19,869 bases of DNA from Octopus sinensis (taxonomy: Eukaryota). Shown piece after piece: positions 1,366 to 17,812 of this stretch; position 1 is the first letter of the stretch, and each line of letters starts with the position of its first letter. The notes below the pieces were generated by a model, which was not told where the DNA came from, made no database searches, and saw only the letters and a list, made by a program, of their open reading frames with translations. The translations under genes were made by a program, and so were the position numbers. The DNA lies in NCBI RefSeq assembly GCF_006345805.1, contig NW_021824101.1:1-19869 (forward strand). The letters are read 5' to 3'.

Positions 1366-1640
1366 CAATCTAGGTAAGGTCACAAAGGACAATAGTCAAA
1401 ATTATATTTCAAGTTTGGTAGTAATTAAATGATACGAGATAGAGGATTAAGTTAGAACAAAGATTAAATTTTGAAGCCTAAACTTAAAATTAGAATCTAA
1501 AAAAAACGAAAACCTACAAACTACAAAAAAATAAAAATGATTGAATTGAAACCATCTACGTTCTCAGATACTTATGTTGATACAGAGGTAGAGGAAAAGA
1601 AAATGAAGTAAAACCAAAAAAAGGAAAAAGTGTATAACAG

Positions 1641-1690
1641 ACACACACACACACACACACATATTATATATATATATATATATATATAAT
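1641..1690. repeat. (CA)n/(TA)n microsatellite
   Basis: Direct reading. Confidence 0.95.
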
Positions 1691-2407
1691 ACACCCAAAA
1701 AAAACGTCCATATAAACCGTACACATATACATACGTACATATAAACACACAAATATATGCATATATATATTGTAACGACCGTGGATGGATACGTTATGTG
1801 TGTTGATTTTTGTCTGCATTTGGACTGATCGAAGAATTTAATAGTGCGATAGAACCTATGGCCGTATGCTGAAAAAGTTTCGTTTTGTGTATTTAGTAAT
1901 TGCGATGAATTATGTGTTAAAATTTGGAGGACTTCTTTTATACATAGCCCACAAGTAGATCGCTGACCTTTCTATGGGACCTTTGTATGGGACCTCGGAA
2001 TCTAATGTGTCGCAGAAATATTTCTTCCTAATCCAAGAATCAAATTCACCGAAGAAAATGAATGAGGTAGCGAGACACTGTAAACACATTTATTAAAAGT
2101 TTTTTTTTTTTTTTCAATAACAGACATCCAATATTTTTTATATAAACTATCCGATTATGGGGATAAAATTTTCAGGTTACCATAGTGTAATAACGGTCAT
2201 CTCATTTTTACCACCTTGGAAATCAATCAACACAAACTACGTATCGATCTCCTTCAGCTGATTTTCCACTAAATACAACATTATGCGCCGAATCTCAACA
2301 ACTTAGTCATGCAGACAATACATGAAGAAGAAATCTATATGTTATTTGTAACAGAGATATCATCGAACTCACTAGACGTGTATTTGCGTTAAAGTGAAAG
2401 AATTTAA

Positions 2408-3215: not shown

Positions 3216-4227
3216 TTTATATATTTGAGTATATATGCACAAGTAGATTTCTTCTTCATTTATTGTCTGCATGACTAAGTTGTTGAGATTCAGTGCATAA
3301 TGTTGTATTTAGTGGAAAATCAGCTGAAGGAGATCGATACGTAGTTTGTGTTGATTGATTTCCAAGGTGGTAAAAATGAGATGACCGTTATTACACTATG
3401 GTAACCTGAAAATTTTATCCCCATAATCGGATAGTTTATATAAAAAATATTGGATGTCTGTTATTGATAAAAAAAAAACTTTTAATAAATGTGTTTACAG
3501 TGTCTCGCTACCTCATTCATTTTCTTCGGTGAATTTGATTCTTCGATTAGGAAGAAATATTTCTGGGCCACATTTGATTCCGGGGTCCCATACAAAGGTT
3601 CCATACAAAGGTCAGCGATCCACTTGTGGGCTATGTATAAAAGAAGTCCTCCAAATTTTAACACATAATTTATCGCAATTACTCTTTACGATATCCAAAA
3701 ACTAATTTTGTGGAATGTGGACATAGGCATGACACATCAATCTCTTTTCCACTTTACCACTTCATGTCAAACTTCGGACAATTTCTTCCACAATAAAATA
3801 GAAAGTGAGATAGTGAAGAGAAAAAGACGATGCAGGATACGAATGAGAAAAAAGAGAGACTTGTGCACAATACCAAAGCTGTAATTTCTTTACCTACCAT
3901 GTAGAAATGGAAGCAAAATGAACGCCGAAAAGATCTATATTCACTGAAGATAGCAAAGACAAATAACGATAGACATTTTGCAGTATAAATATATTTTCTT
4001 TCTCCATTAAGTAAAAGCGTTTCCCAATAGTCTATAGTTTCAAACACAATTAATATTTATCTCTATATAAGTCAACATAAATCATCTCACACCATTTTCT
4101 GTGATTGCATAACAAGTTATAAATATTATTATATAATGCTTATTAGTTCCATCTACGCTAAAATGATGTTGCATTTCAAGTCTAACGCAGGAATACTAGT
4201 TTTCATGATTACAAGAATTACACGCTA

Positions 4228-6859: not shown

Positions 6860-7330
6860 ATCATCCTCATCATCACCATCATCACAACCGCATCCATTAC
6901 CTTCACCATCGTCGTCGTCGTCATCGTCATCGTCATCATCATTATCTGGCTACCGTCAACATTGTCGACGCCGTCATCATCAAAGTCGTGGTTGTCGTCA
7001 ACATCTCCATCCTCCACCTCTTCAACCTCCATCACTACCTCATCGCCTTCCTCCTCCTCCTCCTTATCACCATCATCATCCTCGTGGTCTTGTTTAGTTT
7101 TTATCTTCTTTTTCTTCTTGTTTTTCTTCTCTTTTTTCTTCTTCCTCGTCTTCTTTTTCTCCTTTTTCCTTCTTCTCCCCGCTTCTCCTCTTTCTTCGCT
7201 TCTTTCCTAATTCAACATCATCGTTCTTCTTTATCATCAACAACACCATCTTCCTCCTATTCTTCTTCTTCTTCTTCATCTCCTGCTCCTACTCCTCTTC
7301 ATCCTCCTCTTTGACCATCTTTTCCTTCTG

Positions 7331-7392
<62 letters not shown>

Positions 7393-7760
7393 ACATCATC
7401 ATCATCATCATCGTCTCCTTATCATCAACAACACCATCTTCCTTCTATTCTTCTTCTTCATCTCCTTCTCCCACTCCCCTTCTTCCTCCTCTTTGTCCAT
7501 CTTTTCCTTCTGCATCATCATCATCATCATCATCACCATCACCATCACCACCACCATCATCATCATCATCATAATCATCATCATCATCATCATCATCATA
7601 ATCATCATCACCATCATCATCATCATCATCATCATCATCGTCATCATCATAAGCATCATCATCACCGCCACCATCATCACCGCCACAATTATCATCATCA
7701 TCATCATCATCATCACCATCATTATCAGCATCATTTACCATGACATTTCGCATCATTAAT
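6860..7760. repeat. Trinucleotide low-complexity tract (CAT/TCT/TCC) with a ~185-bp internal tandem duplication
   Basis: ttatcatcaacaacaccatcttcc at 7231 and 7419; ttttccttctgcatcatc at ~7319 and ~7502. Confidence 0.9.
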
Positions 7761-7984
7761 TAATATAATTTACATCATGACATTTATTATCAGTAAATTT
7801 ACTACTTCAGTTTTTTCCAACAACCTCACAACTATCATAATTTTAAATGTTTTTTATCAACTGTTTTTTTATGTTCTGTTTCATCATTAACGTTAGATTA
7901 ATTTTTATGATACACAGTGCGGGCATCTGTATCTGCAACATAATCTCTGTGGATGCTGAGTGTTGTTGGTCTTGGTCCGAGGTG

Positions 7985-8017
7985 ATGCTGTTGTTGTTTT
8001 TGTTGTTGTTGTTGTTG

Positions 8018-8087
<70 letters not shown>

Positions 8088-8110
8088 CATCATCATCATT
8101 ATTATTATCA
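7985..8110. repeat. (GTT)n(ATT)n(ATC)n microsatellite
   Basis: Direct reading. Confidence 0.95.
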
Positions 8111-8116
8111 TTAAAT

Positions 8117-8245
8117 CAGCGAGGTGGCAGAATCGTTAGCGGGACGGGCGAAATAGTTAGCGGTATTTTGCCCAGCACTACGTTCTTAGTTCAAATTCCA
8201 CCGAAGTCTATTTTGCTTTTTATCCTGTCGGGGTCGATAAAATAG
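8117..8245 (+). mobile_element. 3'-truncated family B SINE
   Basis: gcgaggtggcagaatcgttagc...gttcaaattccaccgaagtc...cggggtcgataaaata is homologous to 14577-14700. Confidence 0.8.
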
Positions 8246-8246
8246 A

Positions 8247-8632
8247 TATTCTTTTATTTTTTACTTGTTTCAGTCATTTGACTGCGGTCATGCTGGAGCA
8301 TCGCCTTGTAGTCGAGCAAATCTATTATAGGGCTCATTCTCTGTAAGTGTTGTACTTATTCTATCGGTCTATTTTGCTTACCGCTAAGTTACGGGAACGT
8401 AAACACACCAGCATCGGTTGCCAAGAGATGTTGGGGGGACAACCACAGAGACACAAACACACACGCACAGACACACACACACATACACATATATACTTAT
8501 ATACATATATACAACGGGCTTCTTTCATTTTCCGTTTACCAAATCCACTCACTTTGGTCGGCTCGAGTCTATAGTAGAAGACACCTGCCGAAGATCCCAC
8601 GCGATGGGACTAAACCCACAACCATGTGGTTG
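8247..8632 (-). mobile_element. Family C SINE with internal microsatellite; extreme 5' end replaced by (TA)n
   Basis: cttgtttcagtcatttgactgcggtcatgctggagc and the downstream segments are the reverse complement of 16820-17220. Confidence 0.85.
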
Positions 8633-8885
8633 ATAATATATATATATATATATATATATAGTCCAAGTTTACAGAATCACATTTCGAAAACATGTGTAGG
8701 AACAACAAGCAGGTGTGTTAGTTTAACGCTCAGGAAGAATGGAAAAGTCTTTTACGTTTCGAGTCTACGCTCTTAGACAGGGAGGATTAGGAAGGAAAAA
8801 AATAGAGAGAATGAAAAAAAAAAGAACAGAGAAACGAGAAGATGTAGAGAGTATATATATCCGATGAGCTTCTCTCAAATTCCTA

Positions 8886-9269: not shown

Positions 9270-9696
9270 TCTACAGAACAATCTTTAACGCTTTTAATAC
9301 GCATGTAATGTCAAGAATATTGTATATACCACCATGGTTACGATATTCCATAATTCAGAAACTAACAAGGGTTGCAAGTGCTAACCACGTATTGGATTTG
9401 GTACCAGAAGTGTTAAATTATAAACGAGATCGTGTAACACCCGTTCTAAGTCGAAGCTATACGTTTCGCTTAACGTTGGCATTAATTTAACCCACAGAAA
9501 TGTAATATCATTCATATAGATAATTAGCAGTCTGTCAGCGTGATGAGCAGACTGTCAGCGTGAGAGGCTATTTGTCAGCGTGAGCGCATGTGTCGGAGTA
9601 ATTGTTGATAGCAGGTAATTGGATTGTGTAATTGTGTATTGTAATTAACTAATTACAGTCCATCGGTTTGTTAGTTGATCGCTCAGCAGCCATGTT

Positions 9697-9768
9697 TGCC
9701 GATCAACTGATGAAAATCTAACTGTCTATCTCTGTGTGTCTCATTGGGTATAAAACTATTGATCGGTA
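9697..9768 (+). ncRNA. Degenerate type I hammerhead ribozyme-like motif
   Basis: 10-bp stem I (9697-9706/9759-9768), CUGAUGA at 9707-9713, stem II atctaa/ttgggt. The second core reads AAAAC-UA instead of GAAAC...GUH. Confidence 0.45.
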
Positions 9769-9819
9769 TCTGCTCTTATGGTGTAGTCTCTGAAAGTGCA
9801 TGCACATATGCCTACATGC

Positions 9820-9840
9820 ATATATATGTATATATGTATA

Positions 9841-9919
<79 letters not shown>

Positions 9920-9975
9920 ATATCTATGTATATGTATATATATATATGTATATACATATATATATATAATATATA
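9820..9975. repeat. (TA)/(TATC)n microsatellite
   Basis: Direct reading. Confidence 0.95.
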
Positions 9976-10114
9976 TAAATATTTAAATATTGAGGGAGAT
10001 AAATTAATATTAATTTTAATATCAATTTAAAACCAGTAGTCCAGCATTCAAAAAATCTGAGGAGTCAGAGAAAATTCAAATATATGTGTATATTGGCAGG
10101 GCTGGCCTGCTAGG

Positions 10115-10507
10115 TAGCCGGCCAAAATGCTAGAAGAAGATCATCAACGATCAAACTACAAGGGAAATTCTCTAGAGGAAGAATTCAGCGAACACCAGAA
10201 CCAACTAAATAAAAATCAGTAAGAAAGACTAAGCACGTGTCTGTCTTGACACAGAGAGCTGGGGTTAGTCTTTCAGTTTGCATCTCGAGGACCGAATGTA
10301 CTGAAGAAGTCACGGACACTTGAATTATGCAAGTAATTCTTTTTGTTAAGACCGAAACCGAGGTATGCATTTAAGTCTGTTTTTTATTTAATTTTTCATA
10401 TGTCCTGCCCGCCAAAGTTGGTTCTGGTGTTCGCTGAATTCTTCCTCTAGAGAATTTCCCTTGTAGTTTGATCGTTGATGATCTTCTTCTAGCATTTTGG
10501 CCGGCTA
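10115..10507. repeat. Perfect 92-bp inverted repeat (10115-10206 / 10416-10507) with 209-bp spacer, abutting (TA)n
   Basis: Base-by-base reverse-complement identity of the arms (92/92). Confidence 0.97.
10294..10372 (+). ncRNA. Type I hammerhead ribozyme candidate
   Basis: Stem I gaatgta/tgcattt; core CUGAAGA 10301-10307; stem II GTC 10309-10311/GAC 10350-10352 with A.C at the base; GAAA 10354-10357; short stem III ACC/GGT; cleavage triplet GUA (cut after 10365). Confidence 0.7.
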
Positions 10508-10509
10508 TA

Positions 10510-10546
<37 letters not shown>

Positions 10547-10547
<1 letters not shown>

Positions 10548-10780
10548 CTTCAAAACACGCTGGAGTTGAACTAGGGAGAGCTGATGAAGGGGTCTTTTCC
10601 TTGTGTAGTTTGTCTTGTACTCTGTTTTTCCGTTGTTAAAAAAAGGTCCGTTCCATGCTTGTTTTTACGTTTTCGTTTCTCGTTGAGTTCTACGTCTATT
10701 TGTGGTGTCCTGTACTCACGTATATATACTTATATATGCATGTATATATACATGTAGATGTAGGTACGTACATATATGTA
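10547..10780 (+). mobile_element. Unclassified dispersed repeat, copy 1 (copy 2 at 18362-18593)
   Basis: Shared ctga(t/a)ga.gggg..ttttccttg, ttttcgtttctc, tggtgtcctgtac and catgtatatatacatgtaga(t/g)gtaggtacgtacatatatgta. Both copies start next to (TA)n. Confidence 0.7.
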
Positions 10781-16040: not shown

Positions 16041-16797
16041 ATATGAAGCACTGGAAATAATTGTGTTAGGAAGAAGGAATGATGCAAGAAAAGACTTATC
16101 GGAAATTCACAGCTAACTAGAGGAAGAGCAATTGTTTGTATTCAACGATATTTGACGGAAGCATATTTGGTCAAGCATGTTACAATAAACCCGATATCAT
16201 AATATAAATTAATTGGCATGTTGACAAGCGACATAGAGTAGCTATATAACGTAATGTAATGTAAAAATTTAAAATAAAAACCTGCCGGGAATAGAATTCA
16301 ATGTTAAGCAACCAAATACGATTCATTAAATGTGAGAAATAAGAAATGTAATGAAATACTCAAGACCACTTGTAGCTGAATAGCTCAAGGAGTGGGTAAA
16401 ATAGCAAATATATAGTGGAATTCTGGAGCAATAGAATGTTAATTATTTGCTGCAAAAACATACCTAATAATGGCGGTTAACTGCCTACTTGAAAACATAG
16501 AATTTCACATTTTAGAAATTAATAATTCGTCATCCTGTCCTTGAAAACGTAGAAATATAATGCATGGTTTATAAGAAGTCGATGATGTATCAGTTGAAAA
16601 CATCGTGTTTTTGTCTACTGTCTGGTTTTCAGGCGAAATATGCTACATGTGCGCAAAATACGCCTGTGGTTACCCTATGGATATTTCTCAAATAAATTGG
16701 TAACATGTTCGAGACAATATGACGTATGGCTGCTGTTGTTGTTTTGAAATAAAATTACCCCTGTCAGGGCAAATAATCTATCTTCCTGTCCCTTGAT

Positions 16798-16986
16798 GCA
16801 GAAAGAGGCTGTGTGGTAAGTAGCTTGCTAACCAGCCACATGGTTCCGGGTTCAGTCCCACTGCGTGGCATCTTGGGCAAGTGCCTTCTACTATAGCCCC
16901 GGGCCGACCAATGCCTTGTGAGTGTATTTGGTAGACGGAAACTAAAAGAAGCCTGTCGTATATATGTATATATATGTATATATGTG

Positions 16987-17019
<33 letters not shown>

Positions 17020-17226
17020 TTGTCCCTCTAGCATTGCTTGACAACCGATGCTGGTGTGTTTACGTCCCCGTCACTTAGCGGTTCGGCAAAAGAGACCGAT
17101 AGAATAAGTACTGGGCTTACAAAGAATAAGTCCTAGGGTCGATTTGCTCGACTAAAGGTGGTGCTCCAGCATGGCCGCAGTCAAATGACTGAAACAAGTA
17201 AAAGAGTAAAAGAGTAAAGAGAGAGT
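16798..17226 (+). mobile_element. Full-length family C tRNA-derived SINE with internal (TA)/(TG) tract and (AAAGAGT)n tail
   Basis: ggctgtgtggtaag (A-box-like), gggttcagtccc (B-box-like), internal microsatellite at ~16960-17020, 3' gcagtcaaatgactgaaacaagtaaaagagtaaaagag. Confidence 0.92.
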
Positions 17227-17413
17227 ATAGGACAAAATTCATTCCTAAATTTAAAATGTTACGGTATCAGATTGGCTGCTATATCTAGCAGCTTAGACAG
17301 ACGCATTGATACATTATAGTTTGAGACCAAGAGAAACAGTTTGGTTTTTTTAGATGCAAATCTCTCATCATAAGTGATAAATATTTCATCTCCCTCCAAC
17401 AATAATATATGTT

Positions 17414-17812
17414 CAGGCGGGGCTGTGTAGTAAGAAGCTTGCCTGCCAACCGCATGGCTCCGAGTTCGGTCGCACCGCGTGGAACCTTGTGCAAGCATCT
17501 CCTACCATAGCCTCTGGCCGATCGAAGCGTTGTGAGTGGACTTAATAGAGGGAAACTGAAAGGAGCCCGTCGTATATATATGTGCGTGTGTGTGTGGGTG
17601 GGTGCATCTGTATTTGTCCCCTGCATCACCACTTGACAGCCGGTGTTAATGCGTTTGCGTCCCCGTAGCCTAGCTTTTCGGCAATAAACGCCGACGGAAT
17701 AAATACTAGGCTTTAAAAATAAGTGATTGGGTCGATTTGCCCGACCAAACTACTTGAGGGCGCTGCTCCAGCATGACCGCAGTCAAATGACAAACAATAG
17801 ACTAAAAGAAGA
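17414..17812 (+). mobile_element. Diverged family C SINE
   Basis: Colinear with 16798-17226, including the internal microsatellite and gctccagcatgaccgcagtcaaatgac. Confidence 0.85.

What the first reader, a model, noticed from the sequence alone, without database searches (positions are those of the whole stretch)
10115..10507. Ribozyme-in-a-hairpin: hammerhead in the loop of a perfect 92-bp inverted repeat
Seen: the arms are 100% identical and both begin/end with TA. A further 13/14 inverted match (10206-10219 vs 10377-10390) is offset by a 25-nt insert. A nested hairpin gaaagactaa/ttagtctttc (10223-10232/10265-10274) is present, and the right end abuts (TA)n. Established: truncated Penelope-like insertions often carry an inverted partial pLTR at the 5' end. 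Inference: a very recent PLE-type insertion or a compact hammerhead-bearing foldback/MITE. A + transcript would self-cut in its loop, leaving two RNAs clamped by 92 bp of perfect dsRNA, a potential Dicer or ADAR substrate.
Basis: partly seen in the sequence, partly recalled or inferred. Interest (0 to 1): 0.85.

Follow-up and report, generated by a model that had tools for sequence, protein, structure and literature searches.

The report
Head-to-head Penelope-like retroelement insertion with hammerhead
The perfect 92-bp inverted repeat is the overlap of two copies, facing each other, of a 546-bp non-coding hammerhead-carrying repeat that was retro-inserted into a (TA)n microsatellite in the way Penelope-like elements insert, so it is a fresh but ordinary example of a known kind of mobile element and not a purpose-built ribozyme hairpin.

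Summary
The sequence facts hold. Arms 10115-10206 and 10416-10507 are 100% complementary, and the offset 13/14 match, the nested hairpin and the flanking (TA)n are all there.

The feature is larger than reported, about 9969-10507. It is one insertion of a 546-bp non-coding repeat family whose unit junction occurs 388 times in this 2.72-Gb genome. Copies sit in (TA)n microsatellites as head-to-tail arrays with fixed outer ends and variable 5' truncation. About half carry a second copy in head-to-head orientation (25 of 56 insertions; none tail-to-tail). The inner junction varies (26-1077 bp), so this is not a MITE.

This is the published Penelope-like element (PLE) / non-LTR retrozyme architecture, best explained by reverse transcription primed from both strands of the cut target. 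The 92-bp repeat is simply the stretch both copies share.

A type-I hammerhead motif lies at 10295-10371 (predicted cut 10365|10366). It has the full catalytic core, no dinucleotide shuffle of the window reproduces it, and a model of this genome's own hammerheads ranks it first. It is non-canonical (A10.1·C11.1, three-pair helix II closing a 40-nt loop), Rfam misses it, and its fold is weak, so self-cleavage is unproven.

Verdict: new member of a known kind; moderate-to-low interest.

The parts
9821..9968 (.). Left flank: (TATC)n/(TA)n microsatellite, the target into which the element is inserted.
   Evidence: Tandem Repeats Finder. The element's outer end merges into TA repeats.
9969..10114 (-). 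Left (inverted) copy, outer part: repeat-unit positions 1-146. This is the extension past the 546|1 unit boundary (the '147-type' end, or tail). Its outer end is the inferred reverse-transcription start site.
   Evidence: BLAST to the 546-bp family consensus, 97.9% over 146 nt; alignment; differences are variants shared with other copies.
10102..10125 (-). Near-palindromic hairpin (consensus CTGGCCGGCTA-CC-TAGCAGGCCAG) that spans the 546|1 unit boundary. The boundary lies in its loop.
   Evidence: RNA fold of unit 521-546 plus 1-40. The exact 25-mer of this junction occurs 388 times in the genome.
10115..10206 (-). Left arm of the perfect inverted repeat = unit positions 455-546 in inverted orientation.
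   Evidence: the repeat finder I1, 100% complementary; BLAST to consensus.
10207..10217 (-). Continuation of the left copy after a 26-nt skip (unit about 430-455 missing; unit about 420-429 present, with the same T421 variant as the right copy). It overlaps the start of the right copy, so this is the head-to-head junction.
   Evidence: 13/14 match to the reverse complement of 10377-10390; alignments.
10214..10507 (+). Right (direct) copy, unit positions about 258-546. It is 5'-truncated and ends exactly at unit position 546 without a tail. It includes the right arm 10416-10507.
   Evidence: BLAST and alignment to consensus, 98.3%. An end at 546 followed by (TA)n is rare: 3 exact-pattern matches genome-wide, of which one (L074) has no homology to the unit, leaving the window and L075; L002 ends the same way.
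10223..10274 (+). Stem-loop of the unit (GAAAGACTAA...TTAGTCTTTC), with an inner GTGTC/GACAC hairpin. It is present in the family consensus as an 8-bp stem.
10295..10371 (+). Type-I hammerhead motif. Helix I AAUGUA/UGCAUU; core CUGAAGA (10301-10307); helix II AGUC...GACC (10308-10353; A10.1·C11.1, then 3 bp closing a 40-nt loop with an inner ACUUG/CAAGU hairpin); GAAA (10354-10357); helix III AC[CGAG]GU. Predicted cleavage after GUA, between 10365 and 10366.
   Evidence: Descriptor scan and shuffles; model R2 top hit; invariant in 49 family copies except at the free core position N7. Not found by Rfam or by model R1.
10508..10547 (.). Right flank: (TA)n microsatellite (target).

Best explanation
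Window about 9969-10507 is one young insertion of a non-autonomous, non-coding 546-bp retroelement. The element is of the Penelope-like / non-LTR retrozyme kind and carries a hammerhead motif. It inserted into a (TA)n microsatellite. Shown: the family forms precise head-to-tail arrays; its outer ends are fixed and always abut (TA)n; its inner (5') ends are variable; about half the insertions consist of two copies facing each other with both 3' ends outward. Inferred mechanism: a PLE reverse transcriptase/GIY-YIG endonuclease supplied in trans cut both strands of the TA repeat and primed cDNA synthesis on each strand. Priming started at internal AU-rich sites of a multimeric or circular template RNA. 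Here the left cDNA started at unit position about 146 and stopped near 455/420. The right cDNA started at position 546 and stopped near 258. The two cDNA 3' ends were joined by microhomology and filled in. The 92 nt that both cDNAs copied (unit 455-546) became the perfect inverted repeat. The hammerhead (unit 335-410) lies in the 'loop' only because one cDNA ran past it and the other did not. The hairpin-plus-ribozyme arrangement is therefore a by-product of integration. Any dsRNA, Dicer or ADAR consequence would be secondary.
For: Family and unit: at least 1281 first-look candidates and 106 scored matches in the genome. The consensus unit is 546 bp with 39% GC. The exact junction 25-mer occurs 388 times. 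Window map: minus-strand unit 1-146, minus-strand 455-546, plus-strand 262-546, refined. Fixed outer ends in (TA)n: all 35 ends examined stop at unit about 35 or about 147 next to TA repeats. Orientation rule: among the first 100 junction hits (56 insertions), 25 have the (-,+) head-to-head order and 0 the (+,-) order; inner distances range from 26 to 1077 bp; same-strand spacing is 546 bp. In 19 of 19 readable head-to-head insertions exactly one end is of the 147 type; the other is at 35 (13 cases), 546 (3 cases, including the window), 404, about 443 or about 77. Same template for both arms: 0 of 92 differences, and both carry the rare T536 variant (6 of 74 in other copies). All substitutions against the consensus are shared polymorphisms. 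Young family: 0.8% divergence within arrays and 2.2% between arrays. Enzymes available in trans: many GIY-YIG hits (4846 candidates), with intact 775-883-aa ORFs carrying RVT_1 plus a C-terminal GIY-YIG domain. Other PLE-linked hammerheads in this genome have the same format, with long helix II and AC[NNNN]GU helix III. Literature: PLE insertions show 5' truncation, partial tandems, an adjacent inverted 5'-truncated copy, a tail often at one end only, and a (TA)n bias (PMC8557442). A purified PLE protein cleaves and extends both DNA strands and starts reverse transcription at internal sites of the RNA, which explains the tail (PMC11167929). Tandem type-I hammerhead repeats are non-LTR retrozymes (PMC7229834), which have been proposed to be non-autonomous PLE derivatives (bioRxiv 10.64898/2026.07.22.740005).
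Against: No autonomous partner sharing sequence with the unit was found among 35 PLE loci, so mobilisation by a PLE is inferred from architecture only. The unit (546 bp) is longer than the 150-450 bp quoted for animal retrozymes. The 'tail' here is 112 nt (positions 36-147), not the 30-40 nt described for PLEs. In vitro the two strands showed no difference in start site (PMC11167929), whereas here the two ends always differ. The outer ends coincide with AU-rich stretches, so microhomology priming by another (TA)n-targeting reverse transcriptase could give the same ends. The hammerhead is non-canonical and unproven. No empty allele or read-level evidence exists for this particular copy, which sits on an unplaced 19.9-kb contig; the left flank is unique in the assembly.
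Confidence: 0.8

Rival explanations
1. A SINE-like RNA mobilised by a (TA)n-specific non-LTR (LINE) element, for example one of the R4/Dong type. Under this reading the inverted arm arises by L1-style twin priming.
For: The outer ends lie at AU-rich sites that can base-pair with a TA-repeat primer. No PLE shares sequence with the unit. From my own knowledge, some R4/Dong-clade LINEs target microsatellites, and twin priming gives 5' inversions. A repeat survey of Octopus vulgaris lists Dong-R4 among its active LINEs (PMC13282606); its relevance rests on my unverified guess about the organism.
Against: Precise head-to-tail multimers, head-to-head structure in about half of the insertions, a tail at one end only and a hammerhead motif are hallmarks of PLEs and retrozymes, not of LINE/SINE pairs (PMC8557442, PMC4209133). 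Classic twin priming gives non-overlapping inverted segments, whereas here the arms duplicate the same 92 nt.
Confidence: 0.1
2. An ordinary satellite or minisatellite whose inverted junctions arose after the fact by DNA-level rearrangement, such as palindrome formation at breaks, replication template switching or unequal exchange. No retro-insertion is involved.
For: The units form tandem arrays. Units within an array are more alike (0.8%) than units from different arrays (2.2%), as local amplification would also produce.
Against: There are hundreds of dispersed short insertions on all large scaffolds, each bounded by the same few end positions inside (TA)n. The orientation is strictly (-,+) with no (+,-) in 56 clusters. 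The asymmetric end rule holds in 19 of 19 cases. Random rearrangement should not respect any of these.
Confidence: 0.05
3. A compact foldback element or MITE, i.e. a DNA transposon with terminal inverted repeats that happens to carry a hammerhead.
For: This copy viewed alone shows perfect 92-bp inverted arms ending in TA, next to TA repeats.
Against: The homology continues 146 bp beyond the left arm. Arm length and junction differ in every insertion. Many copies have no inverted arm at all. The right end at position 546 is shared by only about three copies genome-wide.
Confidence: 0.02
4. An assembly artefact, such as a chimeric or palindromic long read, on an unplaced contig.
For: The window is a whole 19.9-kb unplaced contig. 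The left flank has no second copy in the assembly. Craig et al. note that PLE structures trouble assemblers (PMC8557442).
Against: The same architecture, including the rare 147/546 end pair, occurs on chromosome-scale scaffolds (L002 on C3, L075 on C3), and the head-to-head order occurs in 25 of 56 insertions. The 209-nt asymmetric loop and the 26-nt skip are not what a missed-adapter palindrome looks like.
Confidence: 0.03

Closest known systems
Penelope-like element (PLE) insertions: pseudo-LTRs, partial tandems, inverted 5'-truncated copy, one-sided tail (Evgen'ev & Arkhipova; Craig et al. 2021, PMC8557442; Frangieh et al. 2024, PMC11167929)
   Same: Variable 5' truncation. Precise head-to-tail repeats. 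A second, 5'-truncated copy in inverted orientation at the 5' end. An extension past the unit boundary at one end only. Insertion into AT-rich/(TA)n DNA. A hammerhead motif in the repeated part.
   Different: The unit has no ORF and is only 546 bp. The extension is 35 or 112 nt, not 30-40 nt. There is no detectable nucleotide similarity to the 35 PLE copies of this genome that I could read. The two ends always use different start sites.
[quoted passage not shown]
   Same: Non-coding, low-GC (39%) tandem repeat with one type-I hammerhead motif per unit. Helix III is two pairs capped by a tetraloop, as described for invertebrate retrozymes. A PLE-like origin or mobilisation has been proposed for retrozymes.
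   Different: The unit is longer (546 vs about 150-450 bp). Helix II carries a 40-nt insertion and an A·C pair where G10.1-C11.1 is expected. RNA expression, self-cleavage and circularisation were not tested here.
Minimal/dimeric PLE hammerheads (Cervera & de la Peña 2014, PMC4209133)
   Same: Type-I topology, very short helix III, an enlarged helix II, and an unpaired base next to A9. Low monomer activity is expected; activity may need a second copy or a protein.
   Different: Loop 3 (CGAG) is not palindromic. The conserved G10.1-C11.1 pair is absent.
L1 twin priming (5' inversions of LINE-1 insertions)
   Same: A second priming event on the other DNA strand gives an inverted 5' segment joined by microhomology.
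   Different: Here the two segments overlap (the same 92 nt is copied twice), both outer ends are start sites within a repeated template, and the structure is the rule (about 45% of insertions) and not an occasional variant.

Membership tests
Hammerhead ribozyme, type I (Rfam RF00163 and relatives) | Conserved core: C3 U4 G5 A6 N7 G8 A9 ... G12 A13 A14, A15.1-U16.1, cleavage after N-U-H | tested here: met
   CUGAAGA at 10301-10307, GAAA at 10354-10357, A15.1-U16.1, GUA then the cut at 10365|10366. The core is invariant in 49 family copies except at N7 (A 37, U 12).
Hammerhead ribozyme, type I (Rfam RF00163 and relatives) | Three helices around the core in type-I order, more than chance would give | tested here: met
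   Helix I has 6 bp (one G·U), helix II 3 bp, helix III 2 bp plus a tetraloop. The descriptor gives one hit in the window and 0 hits in 300 dinucleotide shuffles. The descriptor was written after the motif had been seen.
Hammerhead ribozyme, type I (Rfam RF00163 and relatives) | G10.1-C11.1 pair closing a stable helix II | tested here: not met
   A10.1·C11.1. Helix II is 3 bp closing a 40-nt loop. The hammerhead fold is -1.7 kcal/mol (-5.3 when the rest is allowed to fold) against an MFE of -12.4.
Hammerhead ribozyme, type I (Rfam RF00163 and relatives) | Covariance-model score | tested here: inconclusive
   Rfam gives no hit at gathering score or at E<=10. Model R1, built from 6 Rfam-scoring hammerheads of this genome, gives no hit. 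Model R2, which adds 4 PLE-linked hammerheads with long helix II, ranks it first in the window at 15.4 bits with a rough E of about 0.008.
Hammerhead ribozyme, type I (Rfam RF00163 and relatives) | Self-cleavage | not testable with these tools
   This needs in vitro transcription of monomer and dimer constructs. One insertion in the genome ends exactly at the predicted cut site, but UA microhomology with the TA target can explain that.
Penelope-like elements (autonomous) | Single ORF with a PLE-type reverse transcriptase and a GIY-YIG endonuclease | tested here: not met
   The 546-bp unit has no ORF of note. RVT_1 plus GIY-YIG ORFs exist elsewhere in the genome. The unit is therefore at most a non-autonomous relative.
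Penelope-like elements (insertion architecture) | 5' truncation, partial or full tandems, adjacent inverted 5'-truncated copy, tail at one end, AT-rich or microsatellite target | tested here: met
   compared with PMC8557442 and PMC11167929.
Penelope-like elements (insertion architecture) | Sequence relationship of the repeat to the pLTR or 3' end of an autonomous PLE in the same genome | tested here: not met
   BLAST of the unit against 30 GIY-YIG loci (+/-1.5 kb) and 5 full 10-kb PLE loci found nothing significant.
Non-LTR retrozymes | Tandem repeats each containing a type-I hammerhead; non-coding; low GC | tested here: met
   Arrays have 546-bp spacing. The motif is present in all 49 copies read. 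GC is 39%.
Non-LTR retrozymes | Monomer size about 150-450 bp | tested here: not met
   The unit is 546 bp; the published range is from PMC7229834.
Non-LTR retrozymes | Expression as self-cleaved linear and circular RNA | not testable with these tools
   No transcriptome access.
MITE / foldback DNA transposon | Constant terminal inverted repeats and target-site duplication shared by the copies | tested here: not met
   Arm lengths and junctions vary (inner distance 26-1077 bp). Many copies lack an inverted arm. The homology runs 146 bp past the left arm.

The most novel reading that the evidence does not exclude
This young, homogeneous family may be a natural record of PLE-type integration that shows two mechanistically different priming events per insertion. 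One obligatory start lies at unit position about 147. A second, looser start on the other strand lies at AU-rich sites: 35, 546, 404 or 443. The template would be a multimeric or circular hammerhead-processed RNA. The single insertion that ends exactly at the predicted cleavage site would then mean that this non-canonical hammerhead (A10.1·C11.1, 40-nt helix II insert) cleaves in vivo. It would also make the family a retrozyme with an unusually long unit in what I guess, without verification, to be a cephalopod.
Probability: 0.2. Interest if true: 0.55.

Novelty: new member of a known kind. Interest (0 to 1): 0.35.

Why it matters
PLE integration is still poorly understood; the first in vitro system dates from 2024. 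A family with hundreds of nearly identical, recently inserted copies could help. It has a strict head-to-head orientation (25 vs 0) and a strict 'one 147-type end per insertion' rule (19 of 19). Together these give in vivo end-point data against which the both-strand, internal-initiation model can be checked. The family also adds a hammerhead variant with a large helix II and no G10.1-C11.1 pair to the set linked to PLEs and retrozymes. For genome annotation, it shows that perfect inverted repeats beside (TA)n in this genome are integration scars of this family and not MITEs or engineered-looking RNA devices. If such copies are transcribed, their long perfect stems could feed dsRNA pathways, but that is untested.

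Tried and rejected
1. Rfam on the whole window at gathering score, on 10000-10620 at E<=10, and on two full units of L024: no hammerhead or any other ribozyme family.

2. Model R1, built from Rfam-scoring hammerheads of the same genome: does not find the motif.

3. Thermodynamic support: the 87-nt hammerhead segment folds no better than shuffles (z = 0.04). The whole-feature MFE does not contain the hammerhead helices.

4. Search for an autonomous partner: BLAST of the unit against 30 GIY-YIG loci and 5 full PLE loci found nothing.

5. Search for an empty allele or haplotig: the left flank 9380-9820 is unique in the assembly.

6. Test whether insertions often end at the hammerhead cut site, which would show use of self-cleaved RNA: only 1 such end in the genome.

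I did not try another route.

8. Organism identity: the assembly size (2,719,151,902 bases), the 13,516 contigs and a 105.89-Mb scaffold match what I remember for an Octopus sinensis assembly. Two literature look-ups did not confirm the numbers, so this stays a guess.

9. Considered and dropped: a coding role for the short ORF on the minus strand of the arm (about 35 codons, MLEEDHQRS...). It is too short and was not examined further.

Full report
1. OBSERVATION

The inverted repeat is real. Arms 10115-10206 and 10416-10507 are 92 nt, 100% complementary, and separated by 209 nt (re-checked).
- the 13/14 inverted match 10206-10219 vs 10377-10390;
- the exact hairpin GAAAGACTAA/TTAGTCTTTC at 10223-10232/10265-10274;
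- the (TA)n run from 10508.

As RNA the 393 nt would fold at -219.9 kcal/mol, with z = -22.7 against shuffles.

The sequence left of the left arm, back to about 9969, belongs to the same repeat. A (TATC)n/(TA)n microsatellite flanks that side too.

2. WHAT IT BELONGS TO

The window is a whole unplaced contig (C572) of a 2.72-Gb genome with 13,516 contigs. The query has at least 1281 first-look candidates and 106 scored matches there.

Most matches cover only query positions 100/108-393 and recur every 546 bp. From 16 units I derived a 546-bp consensus with 39% GC. Mapped to that unit, the window reads:
- 9969-10114: minus strand, unit 1-146;
- 10115-10206: minus strand, unit 455-546;
- about 10207-10217: minus strand, unit about 420-429, after a 26-nt skip;
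- 10214-10507: plus strand, unit about 258-546.

The exact 25-mer across the unit junction (546|1) occurs 388 times in the genome.

The unit has no meaningful ORF. Rfam finds no RNA family in it.

3. ARCHITECTURE OF THE FAMILY

- Outer ends. Arrays of 0.3 to more than 7 units end at unit position about 35 or about 147, and the end always runs into (TA)n.
- Inner ends. The 5' ends fall anywhere in the unit.
- Orientation. Among the first 100 junction hits (56 insertions on four scaffolds), 25 insertions contain copies in (-,+) order, i.e. head to head with both 3' ends outward. None has (+,-) order. The inner distance ranges from 26 to 1077 bp. Same-strand spacing is 546 bp.
- Consequence for the hammerhead. 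The inverted arrangement recurs with variable junctions and fixed outer ends. Whether the hammerhead region lies in the loop (window, L003), across an arm boundary (L010) or in both arms (L017) differs from copy to copy.
- End asymmetry. In all 19 head-to-head insertions I could read, exactly one end is of the 147 type. The other end is at 35 (13 cases), 546 (3 cases: the window, L002, L075), 404 (1), about 443 (1) or about 77 (1).
- Rarity of the 546 end. The pattern for position 546 followed by (TA)n matches 3 places genome-wide. One of these (L074) has no homology to the unit, leaving the window and L075; L002 ends the same way.

4. AGE AND TEMPLATE

The two arms differ at 0 of 92 positions. 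Both carry the T536 variant, which is rare in other copies (6 of 74).

Every substitution of this copy against the consensus is a variant shared with other copies. The only private changes are a 4-nt duplication at the junction and one extra T in a T run.

Family divergence is 0.8% within arrays and 2.2% between arrays. This is a recent insertion of a recently active family, and both arms were copied from the same source sequence.

5. THE HAMMERHEAD

A type-I motif lies at 10295-10371 (+):
- helix I: AAUGUA/UGCAUU;
- core: CUGAAGA;
- helix II: AGUC...GACC;
- GAAA;
- helix III: AC[CGAG]GU;
- cleavage after GUA, between 10365 and 10366.

Evidence for it:
- All invariant core bases are present.
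- A standard descriptor hits the window once and hits none of 300 dinucleotide shuffles.
- In 49 family copies the 95-nt region is invariant except at the one free core position, N7 (A 37, U 12). This is weak evidence, because the family is young and shared polymorphisms are few everywhere.
- Bona fide Rfam-scoring hammerheads of the same genome have the same format, CUGAAGA-G..C-GAAAC-AUGU-GUC.
- Hammerhead motifs next to intact PLE ORFs of this genome have helix II inserts of 26-54 nt. One of them has A at position 10.1.
- A model built only from those independent sequences ranks 10295-10371 first in the window, at 15.4 bits and a rough E of about 0.008.

Evidence against it:
- Rfam finds nothing even at E<=10.
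- A stricter genome-specific model misses it.
- The conserved G10.1-C11.1 pair is replaced by A·C.
- Helix II is 3 bp closing 40 nt.
- The hammerhead fold is far above the MFE: -1.7 to -5.3 against -12.4 kcal/mol.
- In the fold of the whole hairpin the hammerhead helices do not form.
- Only one insertion in the genome ends at the predicted cut site.

Published PLE hammerheads with short helix III cleave poorly alone and need a second copy or a protein (PMC4209133, PMC7229834, PMC11167929). The window holds one copy only.

My reading is that this is a genuine hammerhead-derived motif (about 0.75). Its activity as a monomer in this hairpin is doubtful.

6. MECHANISM

The family's features match what is described for Penelope-like elements: 5' truncation, partial tandems, an adjacent inverted 5'-truncated copy, a tail often at one end only, and a (TA)n bias (Craig et al. 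2021, PMC8557442).

Frangieh et al. 2024 (PMC11167929) showed that a purified PLE protein cleaves and extends both DNA strands. It starts reverse transcription at internal sites of the RNA, which accounts for the tail. Hammerhead cleavage was not needed for insertion in that system.

Applied to this locus (inference):
- Both strands of a TA repeat were cut.
- One strand primed cDNA at unit position about 146, and the other at position 546.
- The cDNAs stopped near positions 455/420 and 258.
- Their ends were joined at a short A-rich overlap (10214-10217).
- The stretch both had copied became the perfect inverted repeat.

The template must have contained more than one unit or been circular, because the left copy crosses the 546|1 boundary.

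[quoted passage not shown] Enzymes are therefore available in trans. No PLE copy that I could read shares sequence with the unit, so the partner is unidentified.

The start sites lie at or next to small hairpins: CUGGCCGGCUA..UAGCAGGCCAG around 546|1, and AAUAUA-CACA-UAUAUU at 22-37. They also lie at AU-rich stretches that could pair with a TA primer. I cannot tell protein-directed initiation from microhomology priming.

7. RIVALS

- LINE-mobilised SINE with twin priming: possible, but it fits the tandem, head-to-head, tail and hammerhead features less well.
- Satellite with later rearrangement: contradicted by the dispersed insertions, the fixed ends in (TA)n, the 25:0 orientation and the end rule.
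- MITE or foldback element: refuted by the variable arms and by homology running past the arm.
- Assembly artefact: unlikely, because the same architecture, including the rare 147/546 end pair, is found on chromosome-scale scaffolds (L002, L075). It is untested for this locus, because the flank is unique in the assembly.

8. COMPARISON AND NOVELTY

In function and structure this is a non-autonomous PLE-like element. Equivalently, it is a non-LTR retrozyme with an unusually long unit. A 2026 preprint argues that these are the same thing (bioRxiv 10.64898/2026.07.22.740005).

It fails strict membership on four points:
- no ORF, so it is not an autonomous PLE;
- no demonstrated sequence link to a PLE;
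- unit size above the retrozyme range;
- a hammerhead that lacks G10.1-C11.1 and falls below Rfam thresholds.

I file it as a new member of a known kind. The 'ribozyme in a hairpin' is an accident of where two cDNAs stopped.

Points worth a specialist's attention are the strict orientation rule, the one-147-end rule, the 112-nt tail, and the clustering of short arms at 83-95 nt next to a C-rich block. In the window that block coincides with the 26-nt skip.

The organism is not given. The assembly statistics match my memory of an Octopus sinensis assembly, but I could not confirm this.

Noticed in passing
L001-L030, L075 (family insertions); window 9969 and 10507: Every readable head-to-head insertion (19 of 19) has exactly one end at unit position about 147. 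The other end is elsewhere: about 35 in 13 cases, 546 in 3, 404, about 443 and about 77 in one each. No insertion has 35/35 or 147/147. The one-sided tail is thus 112 nt, much longer than the 30-40 nt described for PLEs.
   Followed up: partly
G000:C16:46782474-46782495 (L013/L073): This is the only insertion end in the genome that coincides with the predicted hammerhead cleavage site (…CCGAGGUA followed by (TA)n). It could mean a self-cleaved template, or it could be UA microhomology with the target.
   Followed up: partly
window 10207-10217; L002, L016, L018, L027: Short inverted arms cluster at 83-95 nt (unit 452-464), just 3' of the C-rich block CCTGCCCGCC. In the window the left copy skips exactly this block (26 nt) and then continues for about 10 nt. 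This suggests a reverse-transcriptase stall or jump site.
   Followed up: no
L068 8135/8623, L070 2078/8013, L072 7515/7922, L041 2615: Hammerhead motifs lie next to intact RT+GIY-YIG PLE ORFs of the same genome. They have helix II inserts of 26-54 nt and AC[NNNN]GU helix III. L070 has A10.1-U11.1. L068 holds two copies in inverted orientation. Rfam-type searches would probably miss most of these.
   Followed up: partly
L031, L034-L037 (e.g. G000:C16:25146363 and 25146794): A second hammerhead family scores above the Rfam cut-off (CUGAAGA-GACCC..GGGUC-GAAAC-AUGU-GUC). At one locus two copies lie 431 bp apart, which probably marks a separate retrozyme family.
   Followed up: no
L010, L011, L012 (G000:C11660 and two places on C10918): Three insertions have identical structure and identity values (minus 368-546 | plus 71-546 plus tail). 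They are probably one locus present three times in unplaced contigs, through segmental duplication or redundant assembly.
   Followed up: no
window 9523-9582: Three tandem copies of a 20-nt unit (ATTAGCAGTCTGTCAGCGTG; 100/90/70% identity) lie in the unique left flank.
   Followed up: no
window 1564-1971 (-) and 3427-3705 (+); also 8312-8776, 16778-17059, 17285-17749: Stop-free frames share near-identical peptide strings (for example KGQRSTCGLCIKEVLQILTHN; ...VYQIHS...). This shows that other dispersed repeats occur several times in the window. No real coding gene is evident. The contig is dominated by microsatellites: (AT)n, (CAT)n 7331-7734, (TTA)n, (TAGA)n.
   Followed up: no
L070 984-2653 vs 6917-8591: A 1.68-kb direct repeat (99.3% identity) flanks a PLE ORF region (unit about 5.9 kb). 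This is a pseudo-LTR, i.e. a partial tandem, with a hammerhead motif in each repeat and TA-rich DNA at its ends. TA-rich targets therefore seem general for PLEs in this genome.
   Followed up: partly
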